Shown here piece after piece: positions 9,004 through 62,648 of a stretch of DNA of 64,000 nucleotides (positions are counted from its first letter, which is position 1; every line of letters begins with the position of its first letter). Source of the stretch: Trichoplax adhaerens (taxonomy: Eukaryota; Animalia; Placozoa). The stretch lies in contig NW_002060953.1 of NCBI RefSeq assembly GCF_000150275.1, forward strand, positions 1,907,723-1,971,722. The letters run 5' to 3'. Under the pieces are notes generated by a model that was not told the DNA's origin, searched no databases, and saw nothing but the letters and a program-made list of their open reading frames with translations. The position numbers and the translations under genes were made by a program.

Positions 9004-10664
9004 ATGGCTTCGCAAAACTGGATAGCGGTTATTTTAATAGCGACATTATTCTTCAGCAGCATTAAAGGGCAAATTGGCCACCCCTCAACTATCTTAAGCA
9101 GTCATTTCAATTTGCTGGATAATACAGTTCATTTAATGATGCAACAACCAGTCGCTTCTAATTTTACCATGGAAAAACGCTCTTTAGAGGTAAGATTGAG
9201 TCTCAACCTTAAAAGTTGATTACCCATGTTGACAGCTTGACGAATGATTTACGATTCCTTATTGATTAGCATGCTGCTTGATTCTAAGGTTGGTAACTCA
9301 AGTTTAGAGCTTTGATGGATAATTTATGATAGTTTATTGATGGGCAGGCTGCTTGACTCTTAGATTAGCTGCTCATGTTTAGAGCAATAACGAATAATTT
9401 AGGATACATAATTGATTAGCAGGCTGCTTAATTCTACTTTTCTATAGATCTCTTTTTTCATACAAACAGTTTTGATTCTTTCACTTTTATGTAACTAGCA
9501 GCAATGAAAGGATTGCATGACAAATTATAAATCAACTAAGATACTAAATGTATATAGTTAGATGAGCTACTAGAATTGCAATTCAAAACTCGTATAATCT
9601 CAAATACCAAAATAGCTGGAAAACAGAATTTTCAATACATGAATACATTCATTTTAACTTTGTTTCTTTGTAGCAAACAAGAGAAATCGCCAAGCCAAAT
9701 GTCACTGTCTGGATTGCTGGCGATATCGATTCATGCAGCCTACCTGATGAGAACATCAGATCCTTTTGCAAGATCGAATATAAAGTTCCCACAGTCATAG
9801 CCAAGAGGACTTCTCGACTTTTTCAGTTTATTATCAAAAATTTCAAGATTCTAAAATCGCAAATGTTGACTGATTGTCTGTACAGCTTGAAGGAAGTGCT
9901 CTGCAAAGGAACCCTACCTCAATGTTCTAAAGATACTGTAACCGCTTCCTATTCAAATATTCAACAAGCTTGTGCACAAGTGCGTTGGTGTACATCGTCT
10001 TTTACTAGTCTTACAGATCAAAGTTGGATGCAATCTTGTCAAGTTTCTGGTCAAACATTTGATTTAAAAGTATGTAAGAAAGCTAATGTAACCTCTATTA
10101 ACCTACAAAATTGCGGTCCATTACCCAAGCAAATTACATTTCCTACATGGATTATTCCAAATATTGAGCAGAAATCAAAAAGCAAAGCTCTAATTCGAAG
10201 AAGCTATAGTCATGAAGGCGTAAATTCGCGTTGCATTGATAAATGGGTTAATATGTATTGCTTAAGTGCTCCATTTTGTAGCAGCCATCACAATAAAATT
10301 GTAAGTGGAATTACGCAACAGCAATGCCAGTCGGCATTAAACTGGTAAGGGATACGACAAACTAATTTCTACTTTCTGACAATCTTTCTGCTGTTGACAG
10401 TTTTCCCCTTTACCCTTAAATATCTATCATGACAGCATTCTAATTCCTGCACTTCCATGACAACATTTTAGCTTACCTGATCGAATTCGAAAATTTCTAC
10501 TCTTAACGGTCGATTGCAATGCGTATCCAGACGAAAATTCCGAAAAAGAAATTATGTCAAGTGAATGTGCTTATTCAAATGGTACAGAATCGATCGAAGG
10601 CGATAACTTGCGATGGCTTCTTTTATATTTTACAATCGTTTTATTAACCTATATAATTTTGTAA
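9004..10664 (+). CDS. Paralog A: 349-aa secreted/GPI-anchored protein with two tandem 8-Cys Frizzled-CRD-like domains (exons 9004-9189, 9674-10344, 10472-10664)
   Basis: Signal peptide MASQNWIAVILIATLFFSSIKG. GT-AG introns in phase 0 and phase 2 (the second splits a TG/C Cys codon) join an uninterrupted frame. Two repeats of C..C....C-x8-C-x5/6-PxC...C..C....C. The C-terminus AYSNG...LRWLLLYFTIVLLTYIIL* looks like a GPI-addition signal. Confidence 0.85.
9211..9435. repeat. ~75 bp tandem repeat x3 in intron 1 of paralog A
   Basis: Three copies ending in ATTGATTAGCA(T/G)GCTGCTTGATTCT-like sequence. Confidence 0.8.
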
Positions 10665-11339
10665 AGGGAAGCTCTTTCGTGTAGCAGCTTACGCGTAGAA
10701 TTAATTATTTTTCATCACTTAAAAAGATAAAATTAAAGTAATCGCATATAGGAGAGAGAAAGTAGCATAGTATTTTTATAAAATAGAGTAGGTCTCGTTG
10801 TTATTTCTACTGAGATGTGACATGAAATATTTAAGCTAATACTCAACTGTTCACACTATTAGTCAGCTAGGAATCGTAGCTATCAATATCTAAATTCGTC
10901 GTAGACATCCATTTAGAGTCAACTTATTGTCGTAATTTTCCTCTATATGGAAAAAATTACGAAAAAAATAATCTAGTGAATTTTATCAGATACATTTGAT
11001 CTATTGGAGAATAATTTTGAACTAAATTAAAGTAAAGTTATTTAAAAAAAGTAAATGTTTACTCTAAATGCACTTAAATCATATCTTTGAATATTGAAAT
11101 AGATTCTGTTTTATATCGAATTTACTTTGCGTTTGCCCTTAGTTAAATTAATACTCTTGACAGTCGCTATGATAGCATTTTCTTGGCTTCTGCAAATGCA
11201 TTAATTGACAAGATATCTATTATATTAATAGCTATAAGATGTAGACATATCTTAATGGATGAATCTTATTTATTAATTTCCTATTAGTGACTTACTTAAC
11301 GTAATAGTCTGATGTATTGATAGATGAATAAATGACATA

Positions 11340-12130
11340 GACAACTTCTATCTGATTTTAAAGGGCATTGGATGAGCAAGGAATATTGTAGACTTCCATA
11401 CTCTACTCTTATTTAACAAAATGTGCTACTTATATGCTAGTTTCCATTATCGTTCAATGCGAACAGTATAGCATAGTCTAAAACGTGAGAGAAATATTCA
11501 TGAACTAAGGGAGAATAAAAATATCTATAGGATTAGCTATTGCATGAGAAACTAGTAGTTTATCATAGGAAGATTAGTATAGGTGCGAATTACAAATCTT
11601 TGAACACCCGGAAAACGATAGCCTGATTAATTTGCTCCGTATATCGCATGAGTTGATCCTTTTGCTAGAATAACTATCTATCATTACTAACTTATAGTGA
11701 TAATTTCCAGTTGTATGGATATTCTACGCCATCATCATATCAGTTACTGTTTCAGGATATTCAACTATCTGAACATAAGAATACTTCAAAATAACACTGT
11801 CTACATTTTATTCCTTTCCGAGTAGCTTTATTACTTTACCAACAACATTTATAAATATCCGGCATTGAAAGACAATCTATAATATTTTTTTGCAGCGAAA
11901 GAATCTGGCTGAAATAAATTGTACACATGGCATTGCAATTAAGCAAGTACCCAATATTATGCCTCGTAATATTGATAGCTCCCTAATGAAATTAGTTGTG
12001 GCCTTTAAATCGATTCAGTATAGAAAATACAGGCTAAATGGGCATCCATGAATGTAGGCGTTTCGGAGCATGAATATTTACACTGCTCTAATCTTAGATG
12101 CTTTTGCAATATTAATCAAACCTTGAGTAT
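11340..12130 (+). pseudogene. Decayed LRR gene relic
   Basis: SSFITLPTTFINIRH*KTIYNIFLQRKNLAEI followed by RLNGHP*M*, which resembles the LRR-CT motif LxGNPWxC with TGG changed to TGA. Boundaries approximate. Confidence 0.3.
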
Positions 12131-12581
12131 TAGTTATAGCAAGTTTTCTTTTTCATTAAAGTAAGTGAGGATATTAGTATTCTAAAATCATAGCAATACT
12201 TATCGATAGAAAAGACTTAGGCAATAAGAACGATACGGTAGCTTGAACGATCATTCACGAAATAATGTCAATGTTGCCGGCTAGAGTTTGTCCGAATGCT
12301 TATTCTTAAAAAACATGGATTGAGAGTAGCACTAACTTCTCGGAATGTGGATTGTAGAGGCAATATCTCATAAATTAGGAGTAATACAAATCATGAGGTA
12401 AATTGAACAAGATATTAAAAAAATACCATGCCTCTGTTACCAATTAACATTGAATTAGCCAACTAACGTGCAATATACCTAAAAAATATGCTCTACTAAA
12501 TAAATTAATAACATGGGTACCATCGTAAATTATATCTATTGCGAAGAAACTTAAAGCATATGGAAAGATTTCACCTAGAAT

Positions 12582-15257
12582 CTATAAAGAAGTGGAGATA
12601 AAATACCCTGCAAATAGTAACAGCAAATTCATCATAACTCTGAGAGCACTATTTGTTGCTGAGTAAGCCTGTTGGCTAGACATCATTAACTTTGTGGACT
12701 CTGCTTCAGGAAAGTGAGCACAGCTAAATGATTGCTCAAACCCTTTTCGAAAGACCGCTGGCAAGCCAATGCAAGAGAAGGAATTGTCGTCAAGAACCAA
12801 AACCTTAACAGTTGATAAATACTACTTCGTGTTTCAACTAGAATAAAAATAATAATCATTTACCATTTTATGCCTTCTTGGCTTTGCTCTTTGGTGACTC
12901 TACCAACAATCTTCGAGCCATCAGCGCTACAAAACGGAACAACATTACAAGTAATGTCAAGCCACTTTGTCGTACAACTTTTGCTTATAATGGCTTGCAT
13001 GAAACCGGTCTTTAGGGTAGCAATATTTAGTCTTTGGTAGGGTATATTAGTTAACATCCAAGTAGGAAATTGAATATCTTGAGGTAAATGACCTCAGGAT
13101 TGAGCTTCGATGGCTTTTTCTTGTGTAGGTACACATTTAGCCAAATCGTAGCGCTGATCGGCATCAAAACTTAATGTTCCAGTGTAACTTTTAGAGTTGT
13201 AGCCAAAAAATGGCCAGCAAGAGCCGACTGTCGTGCAGTCTGTGGTATAATTCTGATAGGTAAAGGATGTTGCATCAGCAGAACATTGAGGTAAAGCGGA
13301 TTTGCACATCATATTCTTGACGGCTTCAGCACAAGCCTTGGGTAACTGAGCCTGGATCATGACATAGCTGTTCATTGCAAACATTAAAAATCGCGATATT
13401 CGATTAAGGATAATGGTGGGAACTTTATAACTGATACCACAGAATGTTTGGATGTTACTGCCAGGTAAACTGCAAGAGTTTAAATCAGTTGCTACCCAAA
13501 CTGTCACTTCATGAGAATGTCGTTTAGCCATCGATCGAGTGGTCTAAATAAGTAATAGTTGAATTCTTTAAGGAAGTTTAATGTAGCCAACATTGACGAG
13601 AAGTCGAGATTTAATGAAATTAAACGTGTAACCCTCTACTTTACCCTATTTTTTAATGCACATCTGCAGATTAAGGTTGTAAAATTGTATAAATCGAATT
13701 TTTGCCGAAAAGACACTATATCAGTAAGGCAATGTTGTAGTCGGCTTAAAGTCGAAATTATCTACGAGAATGAGTTATAATTTGACACTGCTTGACCACA
13801 GTAAAACTATGAAATTATTGGGTCAAGGATACAAGTTTTGGCATAGGAAAATAGACTTGGCTGAATATTAGATTTACACTTTGCAGTAGTACTTTTAATT
13901 TTGGAATGTTAAGATTTGGATTTGTTTTACAGAGGTCGAAACGATCATTTTCTTCCACTTAATCATCCCAGTCCTTCATTGTCATGCATAACTATCAACT
14001 TCTAAATTGATAATCCTCGAAAGATTATAGCTAAGACTTTCATCGATTTCAAGGATTATCAACGATGTTGATGAATAATGCTCATTTTACATTTATTACA
14101 ATTTTACGAGCATGTCAAAATTACGGAAGGAATACACGTAATCATTGAATAAACTGTAAGTGATTGGTAGACTCGTTCTGAGAGGTCTAGATCGATTTAG
14201 CATTGCACGCCTCAAAGATGAAGTAGAGAATAGATTACTTTAAATGACATGAATGGAATGTATAGCGAGTAGTTTCTGATATATTAAGAAATGGATTATT
14301 TTAACCTATGAGGATGAATTATGCTCAGTTTGGATCTATTAAACTTTGACATGTAGACATGAAGATTACCGAAGGAAAAGAAGAAATCATTGAATAAAAT
14401 GCATGCGATTTGGAAACTCGTTACGGAGTAATCTCAATGAATTTAGATTCCATGTTTCATTGAGAAAGCTACCTCTGCTTTGCAAAAGATATAAATGGAA
14501 AGAGATAATTTGAGCCGATGTTGATGGATGATGCTCTGCTTGGATTCATTAAAACTTTTACGAACACATGAGGATTACGGAAGGAAATAAATGAAAGAAT
14601 TCAATGTAGTAAAATGCTTTCGATCTCAAGACTTGTCGTTGAGTAGCCTCGATCAATTTCGATGTGATGCTTAGCTGAGAAGTTAGCTATACACTCGTTA
14701 TAGACGAAATAGATTATTTGAATGAAATTTAGTTAAATGGGAGTTAGAGAAATTTTTAGTGTATGTTTAACCTGCAGTATCGATCCCATTTCAATTTTAT
14801 GATTATATCAAGAGTGTGTAAGATAGACTGAAATGAGTTCTTCTCTCTTGTGCAAAAATCATCTTTGTTAATCGGTACAACTTGACTAGTCTCTTTGCAA
14901 ATAGTTTTGAGAAAATTAATCTGTTATTGCACCTAGAAATATTCGCACTGGAATAATATAAAGTAAAATAGCACCATTTCATACTAATTAGAATGGTGGC
15001 TGCAGTGGTAATTCTTGGCTTTAGAATGAGACTTTATAGGTAGTACGTAAAACTAGCAGTTTGCTTGTCATATAGACTGCCATCACTTAGCAGACTTTAC
15101 CTAAAATGATTACTTTGCTCTTCAACAGAACATCCTTGACTGAATTTAATAACATAGAACCGCCATCTTGGAAATGATCCTGACTGGAAGCACGGGCAGG
15201 ATGGCTGCCAAATAAATTAGATATGACTAGAACAGAATGAAGTATTGACTTGAACAT
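12582..15257 (-). pseudogene. Paralog B: tandem CRD-like GPI protein, recently disabled (exons 15257-15114, 13543-12864, 12765-12582)
   Basis: Colinear with paralog A (VTVWVATDLNSCSLP..FC..YKVPT vs VTVWIAGDIDSCSLP..FC..YKVPT), with the same intron phases, a signal-peptide exon and a GPI-like tail. Lesions: in-frame TGA at 13096-13094 at a conserved Cys, last acceptor reads GG rather than AG (12767-12766), and two other Cys positions are Ser codons. Confidence 0.8.
14060..14700. repeat. Degenerate ~210-245 bp tandem repeat x3 in intron 1 of paralog B
   Basis: GATGAATxATGCTC...ATTACGGAAGGAA...AATCATTGAATAAA...ACTCGTT recurs near 14070, 14313 and 14523. Confidence 0.75.
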
Positions 15258-16559
15258 GTTAGTCAATTGGTTTCTTCTCTTAAAGCTTTCCTCCTGCTAG
15301 TCAATAAAAATCACAGAGGTAAGGACTTAAATGAATACGCTGTGAAATGGTTTAAAAAGGACTTCTATGCTACCTTGGGTCACCGAATATCTTTTAATGG
15401 GTCAGAATCTTCTTTCGCGGCCGTTAGATTACAGAGGATGCAAACTAGAAATTGATGCTTGTAACCATTTCATGGATTGAATGGTTACCAGTTATTATTG
15501 GATATCAAGTTTTTGTTTATGTCTGTTTAGCAAGCCTCTGTTTATTTATTTGATCTTTCCGATATTGCTTGAGAAAAAGTGTGCTCAACTTTTCAATGAT
15601 TGGGTCGTAGCTCTGTCACAATAAGACACCGATTTACTTTAGATTAATAGTCTAGGATTATGAAGCAGAGAACTGTGCTATCAACTTTGTTATAGAGGCA
15701 TTATTGGTATTTTTCGCTCGTCACTATTCGTTATTATAAAATGTTAGAGCAGAAATTATTCATAATACTTGTTATACTGCGCAATTTGGAGGCCAAAATA
15801 TATCTAATTCAAGGTTTTAGCGAGTGTATGCTTTTCTGTTCATCATTTAAATTTTAGGTTATACTCTGCTATATTGACATGTAAAGCTAGACAGGAGGCT
15901 TTGCCTTTGTGAACAATTTTATATTATGATAACGAGGAGTGTGAAAAATTTCGATCATATCTTGTTAGATCAAGCTATACCCTAACGTTATCATTAGGTA
16001 AGAAATAATCGCGGCATCCGTAATTTTGGTGTTACTATGCCGAACTCATAATAAGAGAATTCTACGTAGTTGACAACTTCGTGTTTAAATTAAAATTTGA
16101 AGAAAGCTTAGAATATCATTGCAGAATTCATATCCACCTTGCCATACCCGCCGTAGCATATCGAGTTATGCCATGCAAATAAGAGCTAATGGGAAATTTT
16201 TGTGTAGTCAACAAATTGGATAAATCAAATTCTGTAATATAAATCTTGTAATAAAGTGTCTTCTCAAAAATACAGCATGAACTACAGTTTCTTATAAATT
16301 TCACTTTATTACATAAGATTAGGTTCGTCCCCTAACTACCAAGGACTATCTAGTTTCAATAGGACTATCTTTTACAGCGAAAGTTCGCGGTTTATATACT
16401 CTTTATTACAGAATGAATTTTACACATTGCAATCATATCTTGCTAATTAAGTCGCAAGATAGCAGTCTTTCATCGCGCAAGCTATTCATTATTCACGCGT
16501 CTAATTAAAGCGCCACAAAACAACTCTCTGAGCACTTACATAATTTGCACTATCTATTA

Positions 16560-17590
16560 TTATCATGAAATCTTAATATAAACATTTCAATAGTATCAAG
16601 GTGATACGCATGTAAACCTTTGCTACAAATAGATATCTTCAAAATCATACTGTCTAACAAATGAGTACTACTACTCTCGTAGAGTCTTACAATCATATTC
16701 CAAGCAATATTTGGGGATGCACGATAAATTTAAAGAAATACCGGTGGCGGTCAACAATTGAGATAGTATACTCGTTCTTCTAATAGTTTTACCCTTTTAT
16801 GGCCTCTATGCATTGCTTTTTACTGGCTACGTTAACTATTCTTTTCTAGTCATGGCCGCAAAATGAAAAGTTTCAGACAAGTGCAAATAGCCCAAATACT
16901 TTTGCAACGTTGAGAAGGTCCAACAAGATTTGCTATGTTGTGAACTCTATTCTATACATTTATGATGTGATCTAGAATAGTGGGAAAAATCCAGGTAGGA
17001 AATGTGACATTCTTGGAAATTGCTTGCATGTCTGATGTAGGACTGGCGAATTTAATGAAAGACAGTAGCTATAATTATATTGTCGGCTTGTAGTCGCTAG
17101 ACAACTATTCTCGTAGCCAGCTAAATAACCTTCCCCTTGATGGAGGTATTTCTTCAACTCGACGCAAGTTTTGGTCATATTTTGGTAAGCAAAGGCTGAA
17201 GAGTCAGCTGAGCATGAAGGTAGATAACTTTGGCAAAGGCAGTTTTGAGTAGTTTTTTTATACTATGGTGATAGTTTTCGAATCACCATCAATTCATATG
17301 TGCTTTTAACAAATGAATAAATATCGTTCAAAGCTTAAAAGGTTGCAACACTGTATGTTTTAGGTAGATTACAATGTAGCCGGAGGATAGCTTCTGGTCG
17401 AACACAAGATTCCCATTTCTCCAAAGACCAATATACTAATGTTATATTCAGTTCGTATATTATACTTGCGAAGAGGCTACATTGAGGCAATTGAGAGCAA
17501 AAGGTAGCATTAATACTATCTTTAAATTCAAAGTACACGGCAAGGAATAAAAAATATACAAAGCCAAAGAATTTTTGATTTAGAATGATT
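16560..17590 (-). pseudogene. Paralog C: degraded tandem CRD-like gene
   Basis: ESCVRPEAILRLHC...LCQSYLPSCSADSSAFAYQNMTKTC...NVTFPTWIFP...FCGHD*KRIVNVASKKQCIEAIK, followed by a GT donor (16792) at the same position as in A and B. At least four stops and two frameshifts. A hydrophobic signal-like stretch KFFGFVYFLFLAVYF has no ATG. Confidence 0.8.
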
Positions 17591-17649
17591 TTAATTAATT
17601 ATTTAACTATCACATACAAGTAATATCTTTGATGATAATATTGATACTC

Positions 17650-19000
17650 TGCTTTTACGTGAAGCAAATTAATTACTTAAACTAAACCCGCTCATACCAC
17701 TTTGCCAACATATTAATTTCTGATGTCCAGGAAATGAACTATTGCAATCAAATTATGATCATAATACAGCAATGTAAATAATTTCAGTGGATGCAGCATT
17801 CGTAGGATGAGTCTTCATGATAAACACCTAGCTATTATTTATGTTTTACTATAATTAGTGATGACTTTGTAAACATAGCACATACACACCAGTGCCCACT
17901 AAAACGAGCATTTTCCCTCCTTATGATAGTAAGGAACAGTAAAACAAGATAGAAAAATTGAGGGAACAAGAACTGCTATTTTTAAAGATGGGCCAATCGA
18001 TACCAACCAAGATTATGTACTCATTTGCCACGTGGAAAAACTGCTCAAATAGGAATACCGGTTGTAATCAATTTTATATTTCAAATTTCCTAATCCCAAC
18101 ACGATCATATCCTTGTAAGAGTGGATTAAGGAGGAGAATAGAAAATGTTTCAATAATGAGAAATGGCGATACTACCTTCAGCCATCAAAGAAAGAAGTAT
18201 TGATAGCCAGATGAGCTGCTAATAAATAAATCCTTGCTGTTGGAGAAGAATACCTTAATTGGATGTACAAAATTATTATCGTGAAATTGAGCAATAAACT
18301 TGCTAATATTCTAAGGTCAATCCTAATGTAATAAAAGTGTCTCACAATAATGGTCTTAGTCAAATGGCGTTTTCTAAAAGGCTTTTACTACAAGGTTTTT
18401 AAGAATAGTAGAGCAATAATCAACCACAGCAAAAATCTAATCTAAAATTTAAAATATTCCGAGCTCAAAGTGAAGTGAAGCCTCTCTTTCCTATGTAAGC
18501 TCATCTCCACAGTTCCTAAATGCATTTCCATCCTTGTCAGCAATATTGCTTATAGGATTCTCAACTTCTTTAGAAGCTGTAAACTACTTTTCAAATCTAC
18601 TATTATGCAAACTGTAAGTTCTTTCAATAGAATAAGAAATTCAATTTAATGACTGATTTCAAGCTGAGCTACAGTCTACATTTCGCATGCAGGTGTGCAA
18701 TTCAATCAAGAAATTCTGATCTGTTTAATAATCAATTTTAGACCAAAATAGGACCGATTTAAGTCTGGGCATAAATAGCGCTTTTAAAAGCAGTGTTATC
18801 ACTTAGAAATGAACCATTATAACTGTAAAACTTATAATTTATTCAATCCCTGATATTTCGTTGGATAACCTTCAAGCTTCTTCGATATCTTTGTAAAGTA
18901 TCGGCCTTAAGGCTTTGAATAATGTCGATATATTTTTCATCATCAATCGCGTCTAAATTTCCATCGGTAAACTAAACGATTCTATGATAGCAGTTAAAAT
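17650..19000 (-). pseudogene. Decayed LRR-GPCR (LGR/RXFP-like) relic
   Basis: DFCCG*...KPCSKSLLENAI*LRPLL*DTFITLGL resembles the LGR hinge-to-TM1 signature. It is followed by TM2-like IYLLAAHLAIN. Many stops and frameshifts. Confidence 0.4.
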
Positions 19001-19770
19001 TAAAATTATCTTTATAGATACCATTTATCTATAGACAGTATGAATGCCTTCGGATTAACGCTAAATAGTGTCAATTTGAGCTAGATATAGAATTTTCTCT
19101 AAGGTTAAAGTGCTTTTGGGCTTGAGTTTTTAATTATGAACATTATTCAATATCCGATTAAAAGTAACCAACAAAAATAAGTTGCAATCGTAAAATTGTA
19201 TTTAATTTTGAATACTTTCGAAATTGAAGATGTATTGATGTAATGATATAAGGTTGACAAAGAATTTCAGCAAATTCCTTAAATTAAAGGCCTTGTATTT
19301 TCATAGAAAAGACTTCAGTATTTTATAAAAAGTAAAGTGTATGTAGAAGAGTAGGCCACAGCTTGATAATAAAACGGTTATTCAACCCTAAACAGGCTTA
19401 AAAATTTTAGCAGATTACTTAGAATTCCATAGTGTTTATTTTTCTGGCAAATAATTTATAACTTATATTTATATTTGTATTTGTATTTATATTTATATTT
19501 ATAATTGCATGGAACATAATTTTTATGTTGCCTATTGGCCTGTGGTTTGATTATGAATAATTTATTAGATAAATGGATTACGAAAAAATTATAATCGATA
19601 CTTTTGAATTGCGTAGTATTTATTTTTCTTTACTGATTAAAAATCGATTCACATTCTGATGCTGAAAATACTTATACCCAATTAAATTCAACTGATCTCA
19701 TTCCCTACTGGTAAAGTAAATAGGAGTCAGTTGATGTAATCTCATTAAGTATAGCACGATACAATTTGGC

Positions 19771-21000
19771 TCATTTTGCATCAATTCCAAGTTTTAATCG
19801 CTTCTTTCCATGATAACTATTACGGTAAGAAAATATTATGGGTAATAAGAACTCACACATCAGTGATGGAATCGTCTCATCATAGAATATCCATAAATAT
19901 TTTTTAGACTTTAGCATACTTGTAAGTGTAAATAATAAGTAAGTAATAGCTATTCCATTATTGTACTTATAATGGCATTGAAAATAAGGTAAGTTCAATT
20001 TCAGGAATGAAATAAGACATACTATTGACAAGTCATTGCAGCGATAGAGATGCAGACATGAATTGGGCCTTAGTAGCGGAAAAATATGAGATGGTAAATA
20101 AGTATATGTTGCCTTTTCCAATGCGATATTCATTATGGCACAGTATTCAATTTCAGTACTAATACAATAAAGGATCAAATGGACAAATTATTACAAAAAT
20201 AAAGGTGTGGATGTATATTGCTTATAGTAGCGTAAAATATGGGATTATCAATAAAAAGTATAATTATACATATTCAATTCTCTATTACTGTAGTTTTATT
20301 GATATTACATCTAAGTAGTAGAAATATAAGAGATCATCTGTACAAGTTACTACAAAGATATAGATGAAGATGATTGTCCTTGATAACCTAAAAATATCGT
20401 AAATAATGTAAAGATACATATTAGGTACTCCAATATACTATACTACACGTGTAATAGTATTAAATCTCGCTGATAATATGTGTATCCAAGGACAAGCTAC
20501 TATAGAGAAAGAGTTGTAGATTTCGACTGTTATAAGTAGTATAAAGATATAGCTATCAAATAAAATGTATATGATAGGTATTTCTGTATTAAACCTAAGA
20601 AATAATAAGAAATCAAGTAGTAATGGACGAGAAACTATTGAAAAAATGAATACCTTTGAAATCGAACTTATATTGGGTTTAGGGTAGAACACTAGTTTAT
20701 TATAATTTGTAACACCCAGTTTATCTTTATTACCATGTTTAAAAGTATTATAAAAGGGTAGACTACGAATTTGACCAACTAAACTATTTAACTCGAAGGA
20801 GACTATTCTTAAATCCCAAAAATGGCTTAATTCTAAGTCTTCTTACTTCATACTTTCTTGAGCTACTTGACTACTGAGCCACATTTTCTTGTAAATGCTG
20901 CTCAAGCATTTAGTGATATCAGATATTAAATTTATTACTTTAATTACTCTAAATCAACCAAGCTATTAAATAAGTAGGATTAGATAAATGATATCCTAAA
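19771..21000 (-). pseudogene. Second decayed LRR-GPCR (LGR/RXFP-like) relic
   Basis: In gene order: LRR-like QIRSLPFYNTF, hinge-like YPKPNISS, hydrophobic segments (ORF 20438-20692), IMNIALEK (DRY-region like), and FLLPIIFSYRN (TM7-like, ORF 19771-20178). Confidence 0.4.
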
Positions 21001-22259
21001 TATGCGAAAAGACATATGCGAGAAGACCTAATTAATGAAAATCTTTATTGAACTTTAAATTGTAACTTTTTGCTGTTTATAACAACTATCTATAAGAAAA
21101 ATAAGACAGAATCATAATTTCTTCGATATGATACTCGGATCAAAATTTTCGGGTTTATACTACTTTCAATAGCAAAATAGTGTAATTCGTACTGCACTTT
21201 AGAATCAAAATTAGCTTCCAGTTTTATCAAAATTGTAGCGTATATGCTATGCAGATTAAATACACATATATTCCTTCAATTACAAACTTACATTACATCC
21301 TTTTTACCAAAATGAATCTGCTGATTGTTCGGCAGATCCACGCGAATAAAGTAGAAGTTAAGTTTGTAATATACTAAGATATCAAGTAAAATCGAATGCA
21401 ATCAAATCAAATTAGCTATTTTAAAGATATGATACTTATTATAACGCTAAAGCTTAAAGAAGTATTCTAAAAATTAAACCTTCATTACGATGCTATGGAA
21501 AATTTATGACTGAAATAGAGATGTTGGTATAGACTATCCTTACTGAAGTAAGAATACGGATAAATATTATAAAGACGAAATTGAACGACGAACAAATCTA
21601 TTTCTCAGGTAATTTTTCAAATCTGTAGCGAAGTTATCTTTTAATTTCCAGTACAATTTATAAGAAGATGTATTAATTGATGTGGTACTAAGAATAACAA
21701 AATCAAAGCGGTAGCATTGATTAACCCGATTTGGAAGGATAACGAAGATGTTCCATTGGTTTCAGAAGTTACATTTGGATAGTAATTGCAGAATTGACGT
21801 TTACGTAAATTGATTCTTGTCTTTTCTGGCAGACTAATGATTAAAAAAGCAAGATTAGATCAATAGCTAGAGTCTAAGGAATGATTGGAATACACATAGT
21901 ATGAGTTTACAGTATTTTATCATCTAGAGTTATTGCCATGACATTGAATGTGGCGACTTAAGTAGGAAGTAGTTGAATAGCAAAATAAGGATAAAAGAAT
22001 TTCATACGTAATCAATTTAGAAATGATGAATTTTTGCAGTTCTATACGATGAAGTCAAATCCATACTGTGGTTTACGAAACGTTATAAAGCTGGAGAAAA
22101 AAATTATAAGTCAACATTGAATTTGGTTTCTTTCACTTTCTTATAACCACCAGTATTTTCTGAATAATCAACTAGCTTCCATGAAAGCTACCCGAGGTAT
22201 TACAATTGGGGTTGCTCGTGATAGCTTATAGTTTTTAAGCTTAATGGCGGTCTTACTAT

Positions 22260-22750
22260 TTAATGATATTCAATATAATCAATGCAATCCACAATGATCA
22301 ATTGGCTTTCATTCAAACCGTCTGATAGGGTGCAATTGAATTTTATTTCGATAGCTTTTAATTGTTAATTTAATGACAGCAATATCGATCGGAATGTTCA
22401 TGCAACTTGTTCACTAATATTCAATATAATCAATGTTATTTAGAAGGCTCAACTTGCTTGCATTAGAGATATCTGATATACTAATATTGAACTTTATCTT
22501 GATTACTTTTAATTTTAAAGCCCATTAACAGTCCCTATTGATCGGTAAGCTCTTGCAATTTGTTAGCTAAGGTAATATTCGACATATTTAATGCGATCCA
22601 GAATGATTAAGATGCTTCCAGTTAAGCTATCGGATATACTACAATTGGGCTTCATCTTGATATCTTTCAGTTTCAAAGCTTAATAGCAGTTCTATCGAAC
22701 GGCATTTCAAAGTAACTTATTTACGAATATTCAATACGATAACGCAATCC
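22260..22750. repeat. Degenerate ~155 bp tandem repeat, 3-4 copies
   Basis: AATATTCAATATAATCAATGC(A/G)ATCC-like motif at ~22265, 22416, 22574 and 22727, each followed by related ATCGATCGG...GCAACTTGTT sequence. Confidence 0.7.
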
Positions 22751-22910
22751 TGTAAAGAGGGGATCTATGGAATACCCTAGAAAAGGCTATTATTAAGGTA
22801 AGGCATTGCTAATAGAAAGGCTTTGGTTAGTATGAGTAATCATAATGGAGTTGATGAATTCTTCTACACTATTAATGACTTCATTTCGCTAGTTGCACAA
22901 GTATTTTACA

Positions 22911-25601
22911 TTAAATATAAATAAGTTTATGATGCCTGCATAAGCTATAAGAAGCTTAAATTAATTTTTTTAAACTTTACATGCCTAAAACGTCTCATTT
23001 TCTTGATAACTAGCAAATTGTTTCAATTTTGGATCAATTACTCCATCTTTAGTTATTAGCGCCAGAATATGTTTTAGTCACCATCAACTTGATTCATATT
23101 CAATTTATCACTGCGACAACTAGTAGAAATGGAATATGAAGTTATTCACTTACCAAGCAACAGCATTTTGACATTGCTGCCAGTCAAAAAATACTTTAAT
23201 ATGTTTTCGATCCTGATCACATACTGGAAATCGATGGCAGAAGAACTGGGCTGCCGTATCCATACATCTTTGGGTGATACCATTGGATTGGGATATTATA
23301 CTCAAGAACTCTTCTGTATTATCAAGTAGTTCTGGCATCTTCTTAGCCAATGCAACAGGAAAAAGGAATCCATCTGGATATGGACTGCAATAATGATGCT
23401 GGATATTGGTTCGATTATAAGCAGTACAATAATCAACTACCACGTATCTGTGACGTGTTGATTGGCAGGCAGCGATTAGATCAGCAAAAGGCAGATTAAT
23501 TTCATTAGAACATTGAATCAATTCATGGCATTGATCTCGTAAATCGAACGTTATGTAATGGGATAAATCATGAGAGCATTTTGGAAACGAAAATCGACAC
23601 CAAATTTTACGAATGATAGAGAAACATCGGCCTAAAATTGGTTTTTGATAATTTAATGTTCGTATGAAGTCATACACATAATGTTTTTTGTAAAAAGAAA
23701 GTAATACATTAGGAACATAATAATGTAGTGAGCAAAATTGTTGTATATTATTATCCGGTTTGCTACATCCTTCTGTTTCGCCAATTACCCATTCTTGTGT
23801 TTTATTTTGAAATAGCTCGTTGTCTTTATTAGCCTAAAAAAAAGAATTGTCAATTTTTATGCCTATATTTTGTCAATGATTAAGGTTATCTAGTTATATC
23901 ATCATAGTCTATTCCAAGTATTGTTGTCTTGGATAGCGATCATTACTGTTGCATTTCATTACCACTTCTAGTTCATTTTAGAATGAATAAGCAAATAACA
24001 AGAATTCTATTACGCCAACGGACGATTTTATTTTAAAGACATTGAGGAAAATAAGCTCGATTCGATATCAAGTATACCATAAATGGGATTAATCTTCAGT
24101 GTGAAGAGTTTTCAAATGCATGTGGAGATACATGAAGGAAATGATATTGTTCTTTTCTAACATTAAATTTGGCAATATGTTTAAAAACGAGCTAGTAGTC
24201 AGAATATATTTCGTTTGCCGCTTAGATTCTTTTGCCAATAGGTAAATACATACTGTAATATCGCAGAATATTGGGTGCATGTATTAAAATGCTAGTACCT
24301 GTAGTATCCGAAATATTTACAAATCCATGGATTTCCAGTTGGCTAAATCTAATCACCCTGGCCTTTTCGATTTTGATTCTTGACTAGATACTACCTCGAT
24401 AACTACCGTATAAGGAATACTCAAATAAAACCTATGAACTATTAAACTTGAGCCTTCATATTACAGTAACTAGATAGTTATTACTAGATAGATGATAGAT
24501 CCCTTTACATAACCCTTATTTTACTGCAAAGTAGCCTATTGGATAACTATTGAGAATTGGATTGGTATAGTTCAAAATTGCCTAGACAAAATATAATCAC
24601 GCTGTTATACAGACTAAGCGCAAATGCATTAACATCAACTATTGTAAGCTGGTATTAGATTTAAAATCAATTTGTTTACAAATCGCAATAGCCATTTTAT
24701 AAGAACGTTTTGTAATTTACATGTGATTAGCTAATTGAATCTCTATGAATTGGATTAATATAATTTAAAATCGAGAGAGATAAAATGGGATGTTGTCCTT
24801 TCAAGAGCAAATGCAATAACTGTTGTAAATTGGTATTTGGCACTTTCCACTAGTGATAAAGTAAGTCTGCACACGTCAACGCTTACGAAGAACGCATCTT
24901 ACTGACTTATAGAGACGAGATGAGCTATATCAACAAATAGTTCAGTTATAACGAACGAATACTGTAGTCTACGTAATAGTATTACATCAAAATCAATTTT
25001 TACGTGGATCACAACTAGGCTTATTATAAAATAGTTTTGTAATTTACCACTAATGAGGTCATTGGATATTAATTAAAAATTAAATATGATTAAGGACTAA
25101 AGAGAAAGAGAGAAATAAGATCTAACGTTCAATGGACTAAGCGCAAACAGGATAATTATTGTAGATTGGTTTTGGATTCAAAATCAATTTCATCGTGGAT
25201 TACCATTAGCCTTTTCGATATTATGGATAAGGTACTTGATTTGATTTATCTAAACCATTAATAATAATAATTATCACTAATAACTAAATGTAAATAATGA
25301 ACTGAAGATACCCCTAACAAAATCGTTGAATACCGAAATTAAAAATTTTTTTTTAATTGTTATAGATTTTAAATACGAAAAGTCAACTAACGTGATTGTA
25401 AATGTGCAGACTTTCATTGATATTTTTCATTATATTAAAAGTTGCTTCTGCAAAGTCTCCATGGTGGTCGCCTTTCTTCAGCATAGAAGTAGAACCAGCG
25501 ACAAATGGAGCCATGTTTAACCCTTGATAGCTGATCGAAGATGGTATCAATAAGGTCAAGTTGACGAAAGTGATGGTCATCAGTCGTACAAGGGACATCA
25601 T
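22911..25601 (-). CDS. Paralog D: tandem CRD-like protein (exons 25601-25392, 23833-23154, probable short last exon 22944-22911); GPI exon apparently disrupted
   Basis: Signal peptide MMSLVRLMTITFVNLTLLIPSSIS, phase-0 intron, then an open 680-nt exon 2 retaining all 14 expected Cys (WVIGETEGCSKPDNNIQQFCSLHYYVP...), then the conserved phase-2 donor. The best downstream acceptor gives CLCRHHKLIYI*. The 3' end is uncertain. Confidence 0.7.
24600..25210. repeat. Degenerate ~190 bp repeats in intron 1 of paralog D
   Basis: ACTAAGCGCAAA...ATTGTA...TGG...AAAATCAATTT...GTTTTGTAATTTAC recurs about 3 times. Confidence 0.65.
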
Positions 25602-32208: not shown

Positions 32209-33687
32209 CTACTTCCTGTCTTTGAGAGTAAGATAGATTCCTCCTTTATTTTTTAATACCCCAGCAGGAATATGCTGATACGTTGGATTGTCTGTTGATA
32301 GCTCAAATCGTTGTAATATTTTTGCTGCGATGGCCTTAAGTTCCTGCAAGGCAAAATTTTGTCCAATGCAATTTCTTGTGCCAACGGCAAATGGAAGATA
32401 ACAGAATGGATCGCGATCTTGACTATTATCTGGTGTAAATCGTGAAGGGTCAAAATCCCATGGATTCTTCCACCATCTTGAATCATGATGATAATGATAA
32501 ATGGGTAGCTCAAGGTCCATTCCTTTAGGAAATGTATAGCCGTTGACCGTCGTCTCCTCACCTAATGTCCTCCCAATAAAGGGGACAGTAGTATGCAATC
32601 GTTGTGATTCTTTCACACATAATGTCGTGTAAGAGAGGGCGGATAAATCATCCCATCGGATATCATTCCTATCTTCAGTTACTTTTCGGATTTCTTCTTG
32701 ACATTGTCGTTGACATTGAGGGTTACAAGCTAAGCTGAATAAAAGCCATGACAGCGATGTTGATGTGGTATCATGGCCAGCAAAGAGGAAAGTAATCACC
32801 TCATGGACAATTTCATCGACAGACATGCCTGTACCATCGCTATCTTTTGCTTTTAACATAATATCCAAGAAATCATAATGCTTCTTATTCTCATTGTCTT
32901 CTTGACTGTCTAATTCAGCTTTACGTCGCAGTATAATATCACGAGCAAACTGCCGACAATAAGCGACATTACGATGAAATTTTCTTCCATTTTGGCTTAA
33001 CTTATATAGAAAACTACTATGATGGAATAGATTAAATATCCTCGATTCTCCTAGGTAAGTATTTTCTCGACAAGCAATTAAGAATTGATGACGAGATCCA
33101 TGAGTTTGTGTATTTAATTCGGTAGAGCAAGTACAACGTATAATAGCATCAAAAGCACATAAACTCATATCGTCTAGGATTTCAATAGGTTTGCCATCTT
33201 TGGCTTTATCCACCCATTTGTTGATTAAAATGTCGGCGCATTCATTAAAGACTTTCATATAAGATTTTAAAACATCGAAATGGAATGCAGGTGTTAATAA
33301 TCTTCGATTCCTTGACCATTGCGGCCCATTAGCTTGTAAGATTCCTGGGCCAACCCATTCCTCAAAGAAGCTATGGATAATTGTTTCTTTACTGATACTA
33401 GGCTTGAGAAATTGCTTAAGTAAGATAGGATTACTGATGCATAACTGGAAATTAGCTACGTTATAAAACATGGGAAACATATCTTGATATTTTTCGCATA
33501 GTTTGGAATGAGCAGGGATAAACGTTTCCAATGTGCCAATATAAGTGCCAGTCAGCCAGTGTGCATAAGGACCGGGAACTTTGCCTAAAGCCTTCCATAC
33601 GTTGGAAATACGTGAAAAGAAGCTATAGGCAGATTTAAGTAGGAAGGCAACTGCAATAGCAATAAGTACTAAGACCAATGTATTCAT
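32209..33687 (-). CDS. Cytochrome P450, clan 4, intronless, 492 aa (copy 1)
   Basis: N-terminal anchor plus PGP hinge, WSRNRRLLTPAFHF, I-helix FLFAGHDTT, KESQR (ExxR), DPSRF, heme motif PFAVGTRNCIG. Confidence 0.97.
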   Translation of the reverse strand: MNTLVLVLIAIAVAFLLKSAYSFFSRISNVWKALGKVPGPYAHWLTGTYIGTLETFIPAHSKLCEKYQDMFPMFYNVANFQLCISNPILLKQFLKPSISKETIIHSFFEEWVGPGILQANGPQWSRNRRLLTPAFHFDVLKSYMKVFNECADILINKWVDKAKDGKPIEILDDMSLCAFDAIIRCTCSTELNTQTHGSRHQFLIACRENTYLGESRIFNLFHHSSFLYKLSQNGRKFHRNVAYCRQFARDIILRRKAELDSQEDNENKKHYDFLDIMLKAKDSDGTGMSVDEIVHEVITFLFAGHDTTSTSLSWLLFSLACNPQCQRQCQEEIRKVTEDRNDIRWDDLSALSYTTLCVKESQRLHTTVPFIGRTLGEETTVNGYTFPKGMDLELPIYHYHHDSRWWKNPWDFDPSRFTPDNSQDRDPFCYLPFAVGTRNCIGQNFALQELKAIAAKILQRFELSTDNPTYQHIPAGVLKNKGGIYLTLKDRK

Positions 33688-44600: not shown

Positions 44601-44990
44601 GGATGGTTCTTTAAAATGTTACAGAAGATATAAAACGAACGATCTGTTCGGGTTTTTACAATTTCTATTATATCCTTCTTTATATCTTGGATACTTTCTT
44701 GTTGACGAAACGAATTCACTTCGTCAGCTGTTAAAACTTGAGCCGCTTGCAGCTTTTCGACAACACTATCATCAAGCCAATCCATCTCTTCAATTAATTC
44801 AGTATAATTCTTGGAGATGGCATCCAGAATCGGAGAACTACATTCAAATTCAGGACGACGACGCTAACAGAAAAGTATTGAAAACGTTCGTTTAGCCTTG
44901 ACGCTTATATTGAAATCTACGAACCAATTTTTGCGTATTGCAATCAGAAAATCAATGGCTTACCCCATAGCTAACGAAACCAGGAAGCAT
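35700..44990 (-). CDS. Apaf-1-like STAND protein: CARD, NB-ARC, helical domain, WD40-like repeats (~20 exons; 3' end uncertain)
   Basis: Exons 44990-44964, 44863-44536 (CARD-like), 44394-44290, 44203-44132 and 44079-43852 (P-loop GIPGSGKT) join in phase. Further exons give DLAMKLRKLC, FILFVFEDV, YCRCYPLAITLLG, IHG, YIQEHLIYHLVEA...WAEVNL and QLYKLV...AYVNL, colinear with Apaf-1. WD40-like exons follow (VTSADGKYM, FHVWNI, LWEI, IWNV, FDVSEDGQLLVS) down to ~35860. Confidence 0.88.
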
Positions 44991-61843: not shown

Positions 61844-62648
61844 TCAGCTTTTTCCGCTTCCTGGGATGCCATGAACCAGTAATCGACCTTGACTGAAATT
61901 CATTTTCATCAGAGCCGTTGCTGTAGTGTTAACAAATGAATCACGTACAATAAGATGATGGCTTGGCAATTCTGGAACATCATGGAGGATATCTAGCAAA
62001 CATGAAATGGCATGTTGATGTAATCCATTACAATTCGTATTTACGTGGAGCAAACTTTTGCCCTAAATAACTCGGCCTTGATTGATATAAGACTTTAAAT
62101 TGATCTTATCGACTAGCTTGAAATATATAATTTTTGATATTTATTTTGGTAACCTCATTTTTAATCTATAAGACACTACTTTAAGTTGCTAAACTAACGT
62201 ACTGACGCTTCTGGTCAGTTTAGTTGCTGCATCGCAATTGCTTTGCTCAGGTAATCTATAGGTCAATTTTATAGGCATGGGTTTATGGCAGTAAATTGAC
62301 AGCATATCAACGAATTCAAACTAAATCCTGATTAGATGCAGCATGAGTTGATGGCTAATACAACTACATTGTATAAAGTGTGTCTACAGCAGCGGTCCAG
62401 AAAAGAATCATGGCTGTAAACAAGGCGGTATTTATAACGAGTACTCACCAAGATCTTCAGGTGCTTCCACATCCTTTCTTAATTTATTGCCCAGAGTTTG
62501 CAATGCTGGATTTGGATGGTTCTTTAAAATGTTACAGAAGATATAAAACGAACGATCTGTTCGGGTTTTTACAATTTCTATTATATCCTTCTTTATATCT
62601 TGGATATTTTCTTGTTGACGAAACGAATTCACTTCGTCAGCTGTTAAA
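61844..62648 (-). pseudogene. Truncated duplicate of the Apaf-1-like gene (3' part of CARD to P-loop)
   Basis: Lacks exon 1 and the first part of the CARD. The exon-3 acceptor is TAG>TTG, there is an AAA>TAA nonsense at 62108-62106, and it ends GIPGSGKS* at the breakpoint. Confidence 0.9.

What the first reader, a model, noticed from the sequence alone, without database searches (positions are those of the whole stretch)
9004..25601. Clustered family of GPI-anchored proteins made only of two tandem 8-cysteine Frizzled-CRD-like domains
Seen: four paralogs (A 9004-10664 +, B 15257-12582, C ~17590-16560, D 25601-22911). They share a signal peptide or signal-like stretch, two Cys-rich repeats, a conserved linker (FPTW in A, B and C; FPVA in D), and a phase-2 intron at the same position (inside a Cys codon in A, B and D). 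A and B also carry a GPI-type tail. The ORF track shows only fragments of these genes. Established: Frizzled CRDs have 10 Cys paired 1-5, 2-4, 3-8, 6-10, 7-9, and CRD-fold proteins (Frizzled, Smoothened, NPC1 NTD, folate receptor) bind lipids or small hydrophobic ligands. Inference: these domains keep 8 Cys and lack exactly the 6-10 pair. With no 7TM, netrin, kinase or protease partner, this architecture matches no family I recognise. It could be a lineage-specific, fast-turnover family of surface ligand-capture proteins or co-receptors, and is the best candidate for an undescribed system here.
Basis: partly seen in the sequence, partly recalled or inferred. Interest (0 to 1): 0.8.

Follow-up and report, generated by a model that had tools for sequence, protein, structure and literature searches.

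The report
Placozoan GPI-type double Frizzled-CRD genes
This stretch of the Trichoplax genome holds four copies (two intact, two decayed) of an unnamed gene family whose small cell-surface proteins consist of two stripped-down Frizzled-type cysteine-rich domains on a probable lipid anchor; the family also occurs in sponges and cnidarians, and what it binds is unknown.

Summary
The window is Trichoplax adhaerens. Gene A (9004-10664, +) is TRIADDRAFT_59591, 349 aa, which UniProt names only "FZ domain-containing protein". B, C and D are paralogs.

Each protein has a signal peptide, two homologous 8-Cys domains and a GPI-type tail. An AlphaFold model built on a 105-sequence alignment (pLDDT 82.8) matches only Frizzled-class CRDs at the top of the lists, for both domains (Z 4-6.3). 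Pfam Fz matches 19 of 22 paralogs.

Corrections:
- The family is not lineage-specific. Trichoplax has about 26 loci. Relatives with the same architecture occur in octocorals, Hydractinia, Rhopilema, Oscarella and Ephydatia.
- B carries an in-frame TGA and has lost a splice acceptor. C is a wreck.
- D's last exon lies at 21833-21641 and also encodes a GPI-type tail.
- "FPTW" belongs to domain 2 and is not a linker.

Function is untested. The most likely role is surface capture of hydrophobic or lipid-modified ligands.

The scan had already noted this family at two other places in the same genome (s1-769141, s1-756270).

The parts
9004..9189 (+). Gene A (TRIADDRAFT_59591), exon 1: signal peptide plus a low-confidence N-terminal segment
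   Evidence: Identical to residues 1-62 of P0001. The hydrophobic h-region IAVILIATLF scores KD 3.1.
9674..10344 (+). Gene A, exon 2: CRD1 (8 Cys) and most of CRD2. It ends with TG of a split Cys codon.
   Evidence: 100% match to P0001 residues 63-285. The family profile hits it at E 1e-73.
10472..10664 (+). Gene A, exon 3 (193 nt): Cys7 and Cys8 of CRD2, a short stalk, a putative omega region (S-N-G) and a hydrophobic GPI-type tail
   Evidence: P0001 residues 286-349. The tail has KD 2.54, with 1 residue after it and no charge.
15114..15257 (-). Gene B, exon 1 (signal-like MFKSILHSVLVISNLFG...)
   Evidence: Read from the sequence: phase-0 donor AAA|gtaatc.
12864..13543 (-). Gene B, large exon, interrupted by an in-frame TGA at 13096-13094 where the family has Cys2 of CRD2. 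Cys6 of CRD2 is changed to Ser.
   Evidence: The same stop ends P0033, a 98.6%-identical protein from another source. No SECIS-like RNA lies downstream.
12582..12773 (-). Gene B, exon-3 homolog with a GPI-type tail. The expected acceptor AG reads TG.
   Evidence: The exon-3 profile hits it at E 1.3e-5.
16955..17598 (-). Copy C: a decayed pseudogene (frameshifts, at least 8 stops; the CRD2 core is largely gone)
   Evidence: E 1.4e-4; 1 TGA, 4 TAG, 3 TAA; fragments in three frames.
25392..25601 (-). Gene D, exon 1 (signal-like N-terminus). The public model P0013 starts at an internal Met.
23154..23833 (-). Gene D, large exon: CRD1 and most of CRD2, open, with all expected Cys. It ends with TG of a split Cys codon.
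   Evidence: 100% match to P0013 residues 42-267. The family profile hits it at E 4e-59.
21641..21833 (-). Gene D, newly placed exon 3 (193 nt): T completes the Cys codon, then LPEKTRINLRKRQFC-NYYPN..., then a hydrophobic tail
   Evidence: Exon-3 profile E 0.0087 within the window. Sequence and acceptor cattag|T. BLASTP to P0001 residues 287-316 gives 40% identity, E 0.002. The joined D model was not assembled or searched.

Best explanation
The window holds four members of a six-gene cluster on this scaffold. The cluster belongs to a Trichoplax family of about 26 loci.

Shown:
- Each intact gene has three exons and encodes a protein of about 320-360 aa.
- The protein has a signal peptide, a short disordered stretch and two homologous Frizzled-type cysteine-rich domains. 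Each domain keeps only the four core disulfides (Fz 1-5, 2-4, 3-8, 7-9).
- It ends in a C-terminal hydrophobic tail of the GPI-signal type.
- A and D are intact. B and C are decaying.

Inferred:
- The proteins sit on the outer face of the plasma membrane. They use the helical groove typical of Fz-like CRDs to capture small hydrophobic or lipid-modified ligands, such as free lipids or sterols, or the acyl group of a secreted protein such as Wnt.
- With no cytoplasmic part, they would act as capture, presentation or decoy co-receptors rather than as signal transducers.
- The many diverged, tandemly duplicated copies suggest a range of ligands rather than a single one.
For: Identity and gene models.

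Family size and clustering: one search gave 33 matches. About 26 loci carry the large exon, in clusters on C1412, C1409 and C1404.

Fz assignment:
- Pfam Fz matches 19 of 22 paralogs, best E 1.1e-8.
- Two relatives score above the gathering cut-off: P0010 (38.1 bits, both domains) and P0073 (34.3 bits).
- A profile search of PDB sequences returns only Ror2, Smoothened and FZD3 CRDs.
- The AF2 model has pLDDT 82.8, with nearly all of residues 70-320 above 90.
- In VIA-align the top 12 of 48,161 chains are all Fz-class CRDs (Smo Z 6.3, ROR2 6.3, FZD4 6.0, MuSK 5.5, sFRP3 5.5, and others). The next, unrelated hit has Z 3.7. Domain 1 and domain 2 are hit separately.

Tandem repeat: hhalign of domain 1 against domain 2 gives 97.8%, E 1e-12.

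Disulfide pattern:
- 16 Cys are conserved.
- Cys are co-lost in pairs: family C6 with C8, C209 with C258, and C196 with C264.
- The alignment to a canonical 10-Cys Fz protein shows Fz C6 absent.

Anchor: tails are hydrophobic, have 0-6 residues after them and carry almost no charge (none in 13 of 15 tails, one charged residue in P0074 and P0107). This holds in placozoan, octocoral and demosponge members. Oscarella members instead have a TM helix plus a basic tail, which places the CRDs outside the cell either way.

Expression and splicing: an RNA-derived contig of a paralog lacks both introns. Two Trichoplax members are named 'expressed protein'.

Argument for several ligands: about 26 genes, against two Frizzleds and one sFRP in Trichoplax (PMC13128682).
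Against: - No ligand, anchor or localisation has been tested.
- A itself gets no Pfam hit on its own.
- The structural Z-scores are modest (6.3 or less), and Foldseek E-values are not significant.
- I could not inspect model coordinates, so neither the groove nor the disulfide geometry was examined.
- GPI anchoring rests on a simple tail heuristic, not on a trained predictor.
- No RNA evidence was found for A, B or D themselves.
- MuSK and ROR CRDs show that Fz-type CRDs can also serve protein-protein roles.
Confidence: 0.5

Rival explanations
1. These are dedicated Wnt modulators: membrane-tethered, sFRP-like decoys or co-receptors that bind the palmitoleate of Trichoplax Wnts and shape the central-peripheral Wnt field.
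For: The fold and sequence matches are to Wnt-binding CRDs (FZD4/5/7/8, sFRP3, Sizzled, ROR2). Trichoplax lacks Dkk, WIF-1 and Cerberus (PMC13128682), which leaves room for other antagonists. GPI-anchored Wnt-binding proteins exist elsewhere (RECK, PMC6338448; glypicans, from my own knowledge).
Against: About 26 diverged paralogs (20-46% identity), plus pseudogenes, far outnumber the Wnt, Frizzled and sFRP genes. The recent Trichoplax Wnt study does not mention them. Nothing here separates Wnt binding from any other lipid binding.
Confidence: 0.2
2. They are recognition or adhesion molecules. The CRDs would serve as disulfide-stabilised scaffolds for protein-protein or glycan contacts (self/non-self, cell-cell, prey or microbe recognition), not for lipid binding.
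For: The families are tandemly duplicated, fast-diverging and rich in pseudogenes, and they are multi-copy in Trichoplax, Xenia and Ephydatia. This pattern is typical of recognition genes. Domain 2 matches best the MuSK and ROR2 CRDs, whose roles are not simple lipid capture. The proteins carry several N-glycosylation sequons.
Against: There is no direct evidence. The family does conserve the helices and the core disulfides that build the Fz-type groove. No polymorphism data were available.
Confidence: 0.2
3. The copies in this window are non-functional relics of a decaying family.
For: B (in-frame TGA, lost acceptor, lost Cys) and C (many stops) are broken.
Against: A and D keep open frames, every conserved Cys, canonical splice sites and tails. 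22 large exons in the genome are open. A paralog is transcribed and spliced. The family is conserved across three phyla.
Confidence: 0.05

Closest known systems
Frizzled-type CRD (Pfam PF01392 Fz), as in Frizzled, sFRP, ROR, MuSK
   Same: Same helical CRD fold, and the same C3-x8-C4-x6-C5 'LC...P.C' core. Pfam Fz hits occur in most members. The four core disulfides are retained.
   Different: Each domain has eight Cys rather than ten, because the Fz C6-C10 pair is absent. There is no 7TM, NTR, kinase, Ig or kringle partner. Two CRDs sit in tandem on a GPI-type tail.
Smoothened CRD
   Same: It is among the top structural and sequence matches (5kzv Z 6.3; 2mah and 5kzv in the PDB profile search). 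It shares the four core disulfides and binds sterols in the groove.
   Different: Smoothened's CRD is fused to a 7TM receptor and has its own extra N/C-terminal disulfide. No Hedgehog-pathway context is known for the placozoan genes.
Secreted Frizzled-related proteins (sFRP, Sizzled)
   Same: They are extracellular, have no signalling part of their own, and present a CRD as the ligand-binding unit.
   Different: sFRPs have one 10-Cys CRD plus a netrin (NTR) domain and are soluble. The proteins here have two 8-Cys CRDs, no NTR and a membrane anchor.
Corin and multi-Fz proteins (e.g. Oculina P0053 with six Fz domains, Branchiostoma 'CORIN')
   Same: They carry more than one Fz domain in a single membrane protein.
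   Different: Those have canonical 10-Cys Fz domains (Pfam E 3e-78 for P0053) together with other modules or a TM helix. They are not the compact two-domain GPI-type unit.
RECK and glypicans (GPI-anchored Wnt-binding proteins with Fz-related Cys-rich modules)
   Same: The proposed logic is the same: a lipid-anchored surface protein that captures a lipidated morphogen for, or away from, a receptor.
   Different: No sequence or fold match was found here. They are much larger and have different domain sets. The resemblance is functional analogy only.
GAS1 / GFR-alpha
   Same: GAS1 is also about 345 aa, GPI-anchored, and built of two helical Cys-rich domains that act as a co-receptor (from my own knowledge).
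   Different: There is no Pfam GDNF-domain hit, and no GFR-alpha or GAS1 structure appears among the fold matches. The Cys pattern is different.

Membership tests
Fz domain (PF01392, Frizzled-type CRD) | Significant match to the Fz sequence profile | tested here: met
   19 of 22 Trichoplax paralogs match at E<=1, best 1.1e-8. P0010 scores 38.1 bits (both domains) and P0073 34.3 bits, against a cut-off of 32.1. A alone has no hit, so its membership is carried by the family profile.
Fz domain (PF01392, Frizzled-type CRD) | Helical CRD fold shared by Fz, Smo, sFRP, ROR and MuSK | tested here: met
   The model has pLDDT 82.8. The top 12 (wide search) and top 19 (second look) matches are all Fz-class CRDs, Z 4.1-6.3, rmsd 3.0-4.5 over 97-119 residues, for both domains. 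Unrelated hits start at Z 3.7.
Fz domain (PF01392, Frizzled-type CRD) | Ten Cys forming 1-5, 2-4, 3-8, 6-10 and 7-9 | tested here: not met
   Each domain has eight conserved Cys. Fz C6 is absent in the alignment to a canonical Fz protein. Co-loss supports family C6-C8 (= Fz 7-9), and C1-C5 and C2-C4 in domain 2.
Fz domain (PF01392, Frizzled-type CRD) | [quoted passage not shown] | tested here: met
   Cys positions and spacing are 10,35,8,6,15,5,15 in domain 1 and 12,39,8,5,15,5,14 in domain 2. Further support comes from co-loss pairs, the profile alignment and the paper. The pairing is inferred from sequence and was not seen in coordinates.
Fz domain (PF01392, Frizzled-type CRD) | Hydrophobic ligand groove that binds a lipid or sterol | not testable with these tools
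   Model coordinates could not be inspected, and there is no binding assay.
Frizzled/Smoothened receptors (class F GPCR) | Seven-transmembrane domain after the CRD | tested here: not met
   The 349-aa protein has only the N-terminal signal and one C-terminal hydrophobic stretch. There is no Frizzled 7TM Pfam hit.
Secreted Frizzled-related proteins | Netrin-like (NTR) domain after a single CRD | tested here: not met
   No NTR hit occurs in any member scanned. The second half of the protein is another CRD.
Folate receptor / NPC1-NTD / HHIP type CRDs | Folate_rec or NPC1_N profile match and the larger 16-18-Cys fold | tested here: not met
   There is no Pfam hit. NPC1 NTD and NCR1 NTD reach only Z 3.0 and 2.9. 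The only other sign is a 0.81 feature lead in the ESM Atlas.
GPI-anchored proteins | Cleavable N-terminal signal plus a C-terminal signal: small omega residues, a polar spacer, and a hydrophobic tail ending the protein | tested here: inconclusive
   The heuristic is met in A and in 14 other full-length members. A ends ...SNGTESIEGDNLR-WLLLYFTIVLLTYIIL. No GPI predictor and no PI-PLC test was available. Oscarella members use a TM helix instead.
GAS1 / GFR-alpha | GDNF/GAS1 domain profile and fold | tested here: not met
   There is no Pfam hit, and no such structure appears among the fold matches.

The most novel reading that the evidence does not exclude
This is an ancient animal family of membrane-tethered double minimal CRDs. 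It is present and independently expanded in sponges, placozoans and cnidarians, and apparently missing from bilaterians. It would capture hydrophobic ligands other than Wnt, for example dietary or microbial sterols and lipids, at the cell surface. That would be a pre-bilaterian surface lipid-sensing or uptake system, and possibly a free-standing relative of the CRD that Frizzled and Smoothened carry.
Probability: 0.25. Interest if true: 0.7.

Novelty: new variant of a known kind. Interest (0 to 1): 0.5.

Why it matters
Frizzled-type CRDs are the lipid-reading heads of the Wnt and Hedgehog receptors. This family shows the same domain in its most reduced form: four disulfides, doubled, and hung on a lipid anchor. 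It is multiplied to dozens of copies in the simplest animals, yet it has no name, no paper and no known ligand.

If the proteins bind lipids or Wnts, they would add an unrecognised layer to cell-surface signalling or nutrient capture in sponges, placozoans and cnidarians. They would also bear on how the CRD was recruited to 7TM receptors.

For annotation, this work corrects the public model of gene D and flags B and C as pseudogenes.

Tried and rejected
- Single-sequence AlphaFold of A gave pLDDT 40 and was useless.
- Foldseek against PDB gave no significant E-value. Fz CRDs appeared only at E 1-5.
- The ESM Atlas gave only leads below 0.9.
- Pfam on A alone, and on single exons, gave nothing, or Fz at E 0.017.
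- A word search with A's large exon found only A itself.
- A full-text search for six family gene ids found no paper. General searches for Trichoplax, Frizzled, CRD and GPI found no description of the family.
- An exact look-up of A's protein in assemblies found no record, so there is no RNA evidence for A.
- hhalign of D's exon 3 against A2 failed because those columns are mostly gaps. It was replaced by an exon-3 profile and BLASTP.
- I considered reading B's TGA as selenocysteine, because it sits at a Cys position. No SECIS-like RNA lies downstream, and B has two further defects, so I rejected it.
- GAS1/GFR-alpha, folate-receptor/NPC1 and FAM155A/Mid1 (6xiw_B, Z 3.4) were considered as homes for the domain and rejected on fold and profile evidence.
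- One unknown-taxon hit was traced only to an ENA metagenome contig, so its organism stays unknown.


Full report
**What the window is**

The sequence is AT-rich (about 32% GC) and its genes have introns. The large exon of gene A is 100% identical to the 349-aa protein TRIADDRAFT_59591 of Trichoplax adhaerens. UniProt names that protein only "FZ domain-containing protein". The window is G000:C1404:1907723-1971722.

**Checking the observation**

- **Gene A.** Its exons are 9004-9189, 9674-10344 and 10472-10664. Translated separately, they reproduce P0001 exactly. The second intron is phase 2 and splits a Cys codon (AAC TG|gtaagg ... ttag|C).
- **All four copies.** A profile of the family's large exon finds all four in the window. 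A scores E 1e-73 and D 4e-59. B comes in two pieces at 4e-29 and 5e-20. C is in fragments, the best at 1.5e-8.
- **Gene B.** Its phase-0 first intron matches A's. It carries an in-frame TGA (13096-13094) exactly where the family has a conserved Cys, and a Cys-to-Ser change later. At the exon-3 boundary it reads TG where the acceptor AG should be. A 98.6%-identical protein from another source (P0033) ends at the same stop, so the stop is not a sequencing error. No SECIS-like RNA lies downstream. B is most likely a pseudogene.
- **Copy C.** It has frameshifts and at least eight stops.
- **Gene D.** The large exon is open, with every expected Cys. P0013 uses a 34-nt intron and ends ...CCRSDKLNMNQVDGD. 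At 21833-21641(-), an acceptor cattag|T completes the split Cys codon. It is followed by LPEKTRINLRKRQFC-NYYPN... and a hydrophobic tail. This exon is 193 nt, the same length as A's. It aligns to P0001 residues 287-316, the residues that follow the split Cys at the start of A's exon 3 (40% identity, E 0.002). With it, the three D exons add up to 1083 nt, which is in frame.

**Family size**

A six-frame search of the whole genome with P0001 gave 33 matches. They correspond to about 26 loci with the large exon, of which 22 are open.

- The loci lie in tandem clusters on C1412 (6.69-6.74 Mb, about 9 loci) and C1409 (4.68-4.70 Mb, 5 loci).
- The cluster on C1404 has the four copies here plus two more, 9 and 45 kb upstream of the window.
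- Nearly every large exon ends at the same point, the phase-2 intron.
- A Logan contig (L031, run SRR27607497) encodes a paralog without either intron. It aligns to genomic L003 in three blocks, so these junctions are used in RNA.

**What the protein is**

- **Sequence.** Pfam Fz matches 19 of 22 paralogs at E<=1, best 1.1e-8. It passes the gathering score in P0010 (38.1 bits, both domains) and in Hydractinia P0073 (34.3 bits). A profile search of PDB sequences returns only Ror2, Smoothened and FZD3 CRDs.
- **Fold.** With a 105-sequence alignment (A2), AlphaFold gives pLDDT 82.8 and pTM 0.72, with nearly all of residues 70-320 above 90. In an exhaustive VIA-align search the top 12 of 48,161 chains are all Frizzled-class CRDs. 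They include Smoothened (Z 6.3), ROR2 (6.3), FZD4 (6.0), Drosophila Ror2 (6.0), MuSK (5.5), sFRP3 (5.5), FZD2 (5.2) and Sizzled (5.1). Unrelated chains start at Z 3.7. Domain 1 (about 79-190) and domain 2 (about 191-330) are each matched, and the second look agrees. The Z-scores are modest on their own. The exclusive Fz list plus the sequence hits make the assignment safe.

**The cysteine pattern**

- A has 17 Cys. Across 105 relatives 16 are conserved, and A's C318 is private to A.
- Rare losses come in pairs. Family C6 is lost with C8 in four sequences, C209 with C258 in one, and C196 with C264 in one.
- C196 and C209 therefore belong to domain 2. Each domain then has eight Cys with nearly identical spacing: 10,35,8,6,15,5,15 in domain 1 and 12,39,8,5,15,5,14 in domain 2.
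- hhalign of domain 1 against domain 2 gives 97.8% probability (E 1e-12) and aligns Cys 1-7 pairwise. The conserved "FPTW" aligns with the Y-x-V-P segment after Cys2 of domain 1, so it is part of domain 2 and not a linker.
- The alignment to a canonical six-Fz protein (Oculina P0053) puts family C6, C7 and C8 on Fz C7, C8 and C9, with nothing at Fz C6.

**Anchoring**

A and 14 other full-length members start with a signal-type hydrophobic stretch. These members come from placozoans, octocorals, demosponges and unnamed sources. They end in a hydrophobic tail with 0-6 residues after it; 13 of these tails carry no charge there, and two (P0074, P0107) carry one charged residue. The tail is preceded by small residues (S-N-G in A). 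Oscarella members and P0068 instead have a TM helix and a basic cytoplasmic tail. Either way the CRDs face outward. The GPI reading rests on a heuristic only.

**Taxonomic range**

A profile search of 1.84 billion representatives found 190 proteins at E<=1e-3. The named hits are:

- Trichoplax adhaerens and T. sp. H2;
- the octocorals Xenia and Dendronephthya;
- Hydractinia;
- the jellyfish Rhopilema;
- the sponges Oscarella pearsei, O. lobularis and Ephydatia muelleri.

All are "uncharacterized" or "hypothetical". Xenia has at least eight paralogs, several with adjacent locus numbers. Ephydatia has at least two on one scaffold. Many genome-derived hits stop at the same Trp/Cys codon, which suggests the intron is old. 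In a quick tree the placozoan sequences cluster, next to an octocoral group and an Oscarella group. A large clade, mostly of unnamed sources, holds the sequences whose named relatives are Ephydatia (demosponge) proteins, and stands apart. The only bilaterian hit I saw was a multi-Fz Branchiostoma "CORIN", which is a generic Fz match. Absence from bilaterians is suggested but not shown.

**Literature**

I found no paper naming any of six family gene ids, and none describing the architecture. The 2026 study of Trichoplax Wnt signalling lists two Frizzleds and one sFRP. It reports no Dkk, WIF-1 or Cerberus, and it does not mention these genes.

**How it probably works**

Shown: these are outward-facing, membrane-tethered tandem CRDs without any signalling part, in many diverged tandem copies that turn over.

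Inferred: they capture hydrophobic or lipid-modified ligands in the CRD groove and act as presenters, decoys or uptake aids. The groove is the feature common to Fz-like CRDs. The number of paralogs, compared with the handful of Wnt-pathway genes, argues against a role dedicated to Wnt for all of them. Some members may still bind Wnt. A recognition or adhesion role is a real alternative.

**Earlier notes of this scan**

Two earlier findings on other pieces of this genome (s1-769141, s1-756270) describe the same family and reach the same reading. I read them after my own searches, and they agree with my results.

**Verdict**

This is a real, correctly observed gene family. The domain is a known kind (Fz CRD) in an unnamed, minimal, doubled and lipid-anchored form. 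It is not placozoan-specific, and its function is unknown.

Noticed in passing
window 32209-33687, 49331-50818, 53667-55154, 57973-59460 (all -): Four tandem cytochrome P450 genes, each a single open frame of 492-495 aa with no intron (Pfam p450, E about 1e-97 to 1e-103).
   Followed up: partly
window 41785-44140 (-): Fragments of an APAF-1-like NB-ARC gene (NB-ARC E 7e-5, APAF-1-like winged helix E 5e-5, P-loop region).
   Followed up: partly
window 44467-44895 (+) and 62380-62724 (+): Two ORFs begin with nearly the same 90 or so residues (MSTAAVQKRIMAVNKAVFIT...). This looks like a repeated segment on either side of part of the P450 array. There is no Pfam hit.
   Followed up: no
window 13096-13094 (-): B's in-frame TGA replaces a conserved disulfide Cys codon, and it also ends a 98.6%-identical protein from another source (P0033). 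The lesion is therefore shared between sources rather than an assembly error.
   Followed up: partly
window 23154-21641 (-); proteins P0013, P0004, P0007: Public T. adhaerens models of family members are often truncated. P0013 (gene D) lacks the signal peptide and the true last exon. P0004 and P0007 lack the tails that their T. sp. H2 counterparts (P0154, P0155) have.
   Followed up: partly
P0001 residue 318 (window about 10567-10569): A has a 17th cysteine two to three residues before the presumed GPI omega site. It is absent from all 104 relatives aligned, so it could be a free thiol or an intermolecular bond.
   Followed up: no
P0053 / P0157 (Oculina patagonica): A coral membrane protein of about 860 aa has six canonical 10-Cys Fz domains in a row (Pfam Fz E 3e-78). 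It is another unnamed multi-CRD architecture.
   Followed up: no
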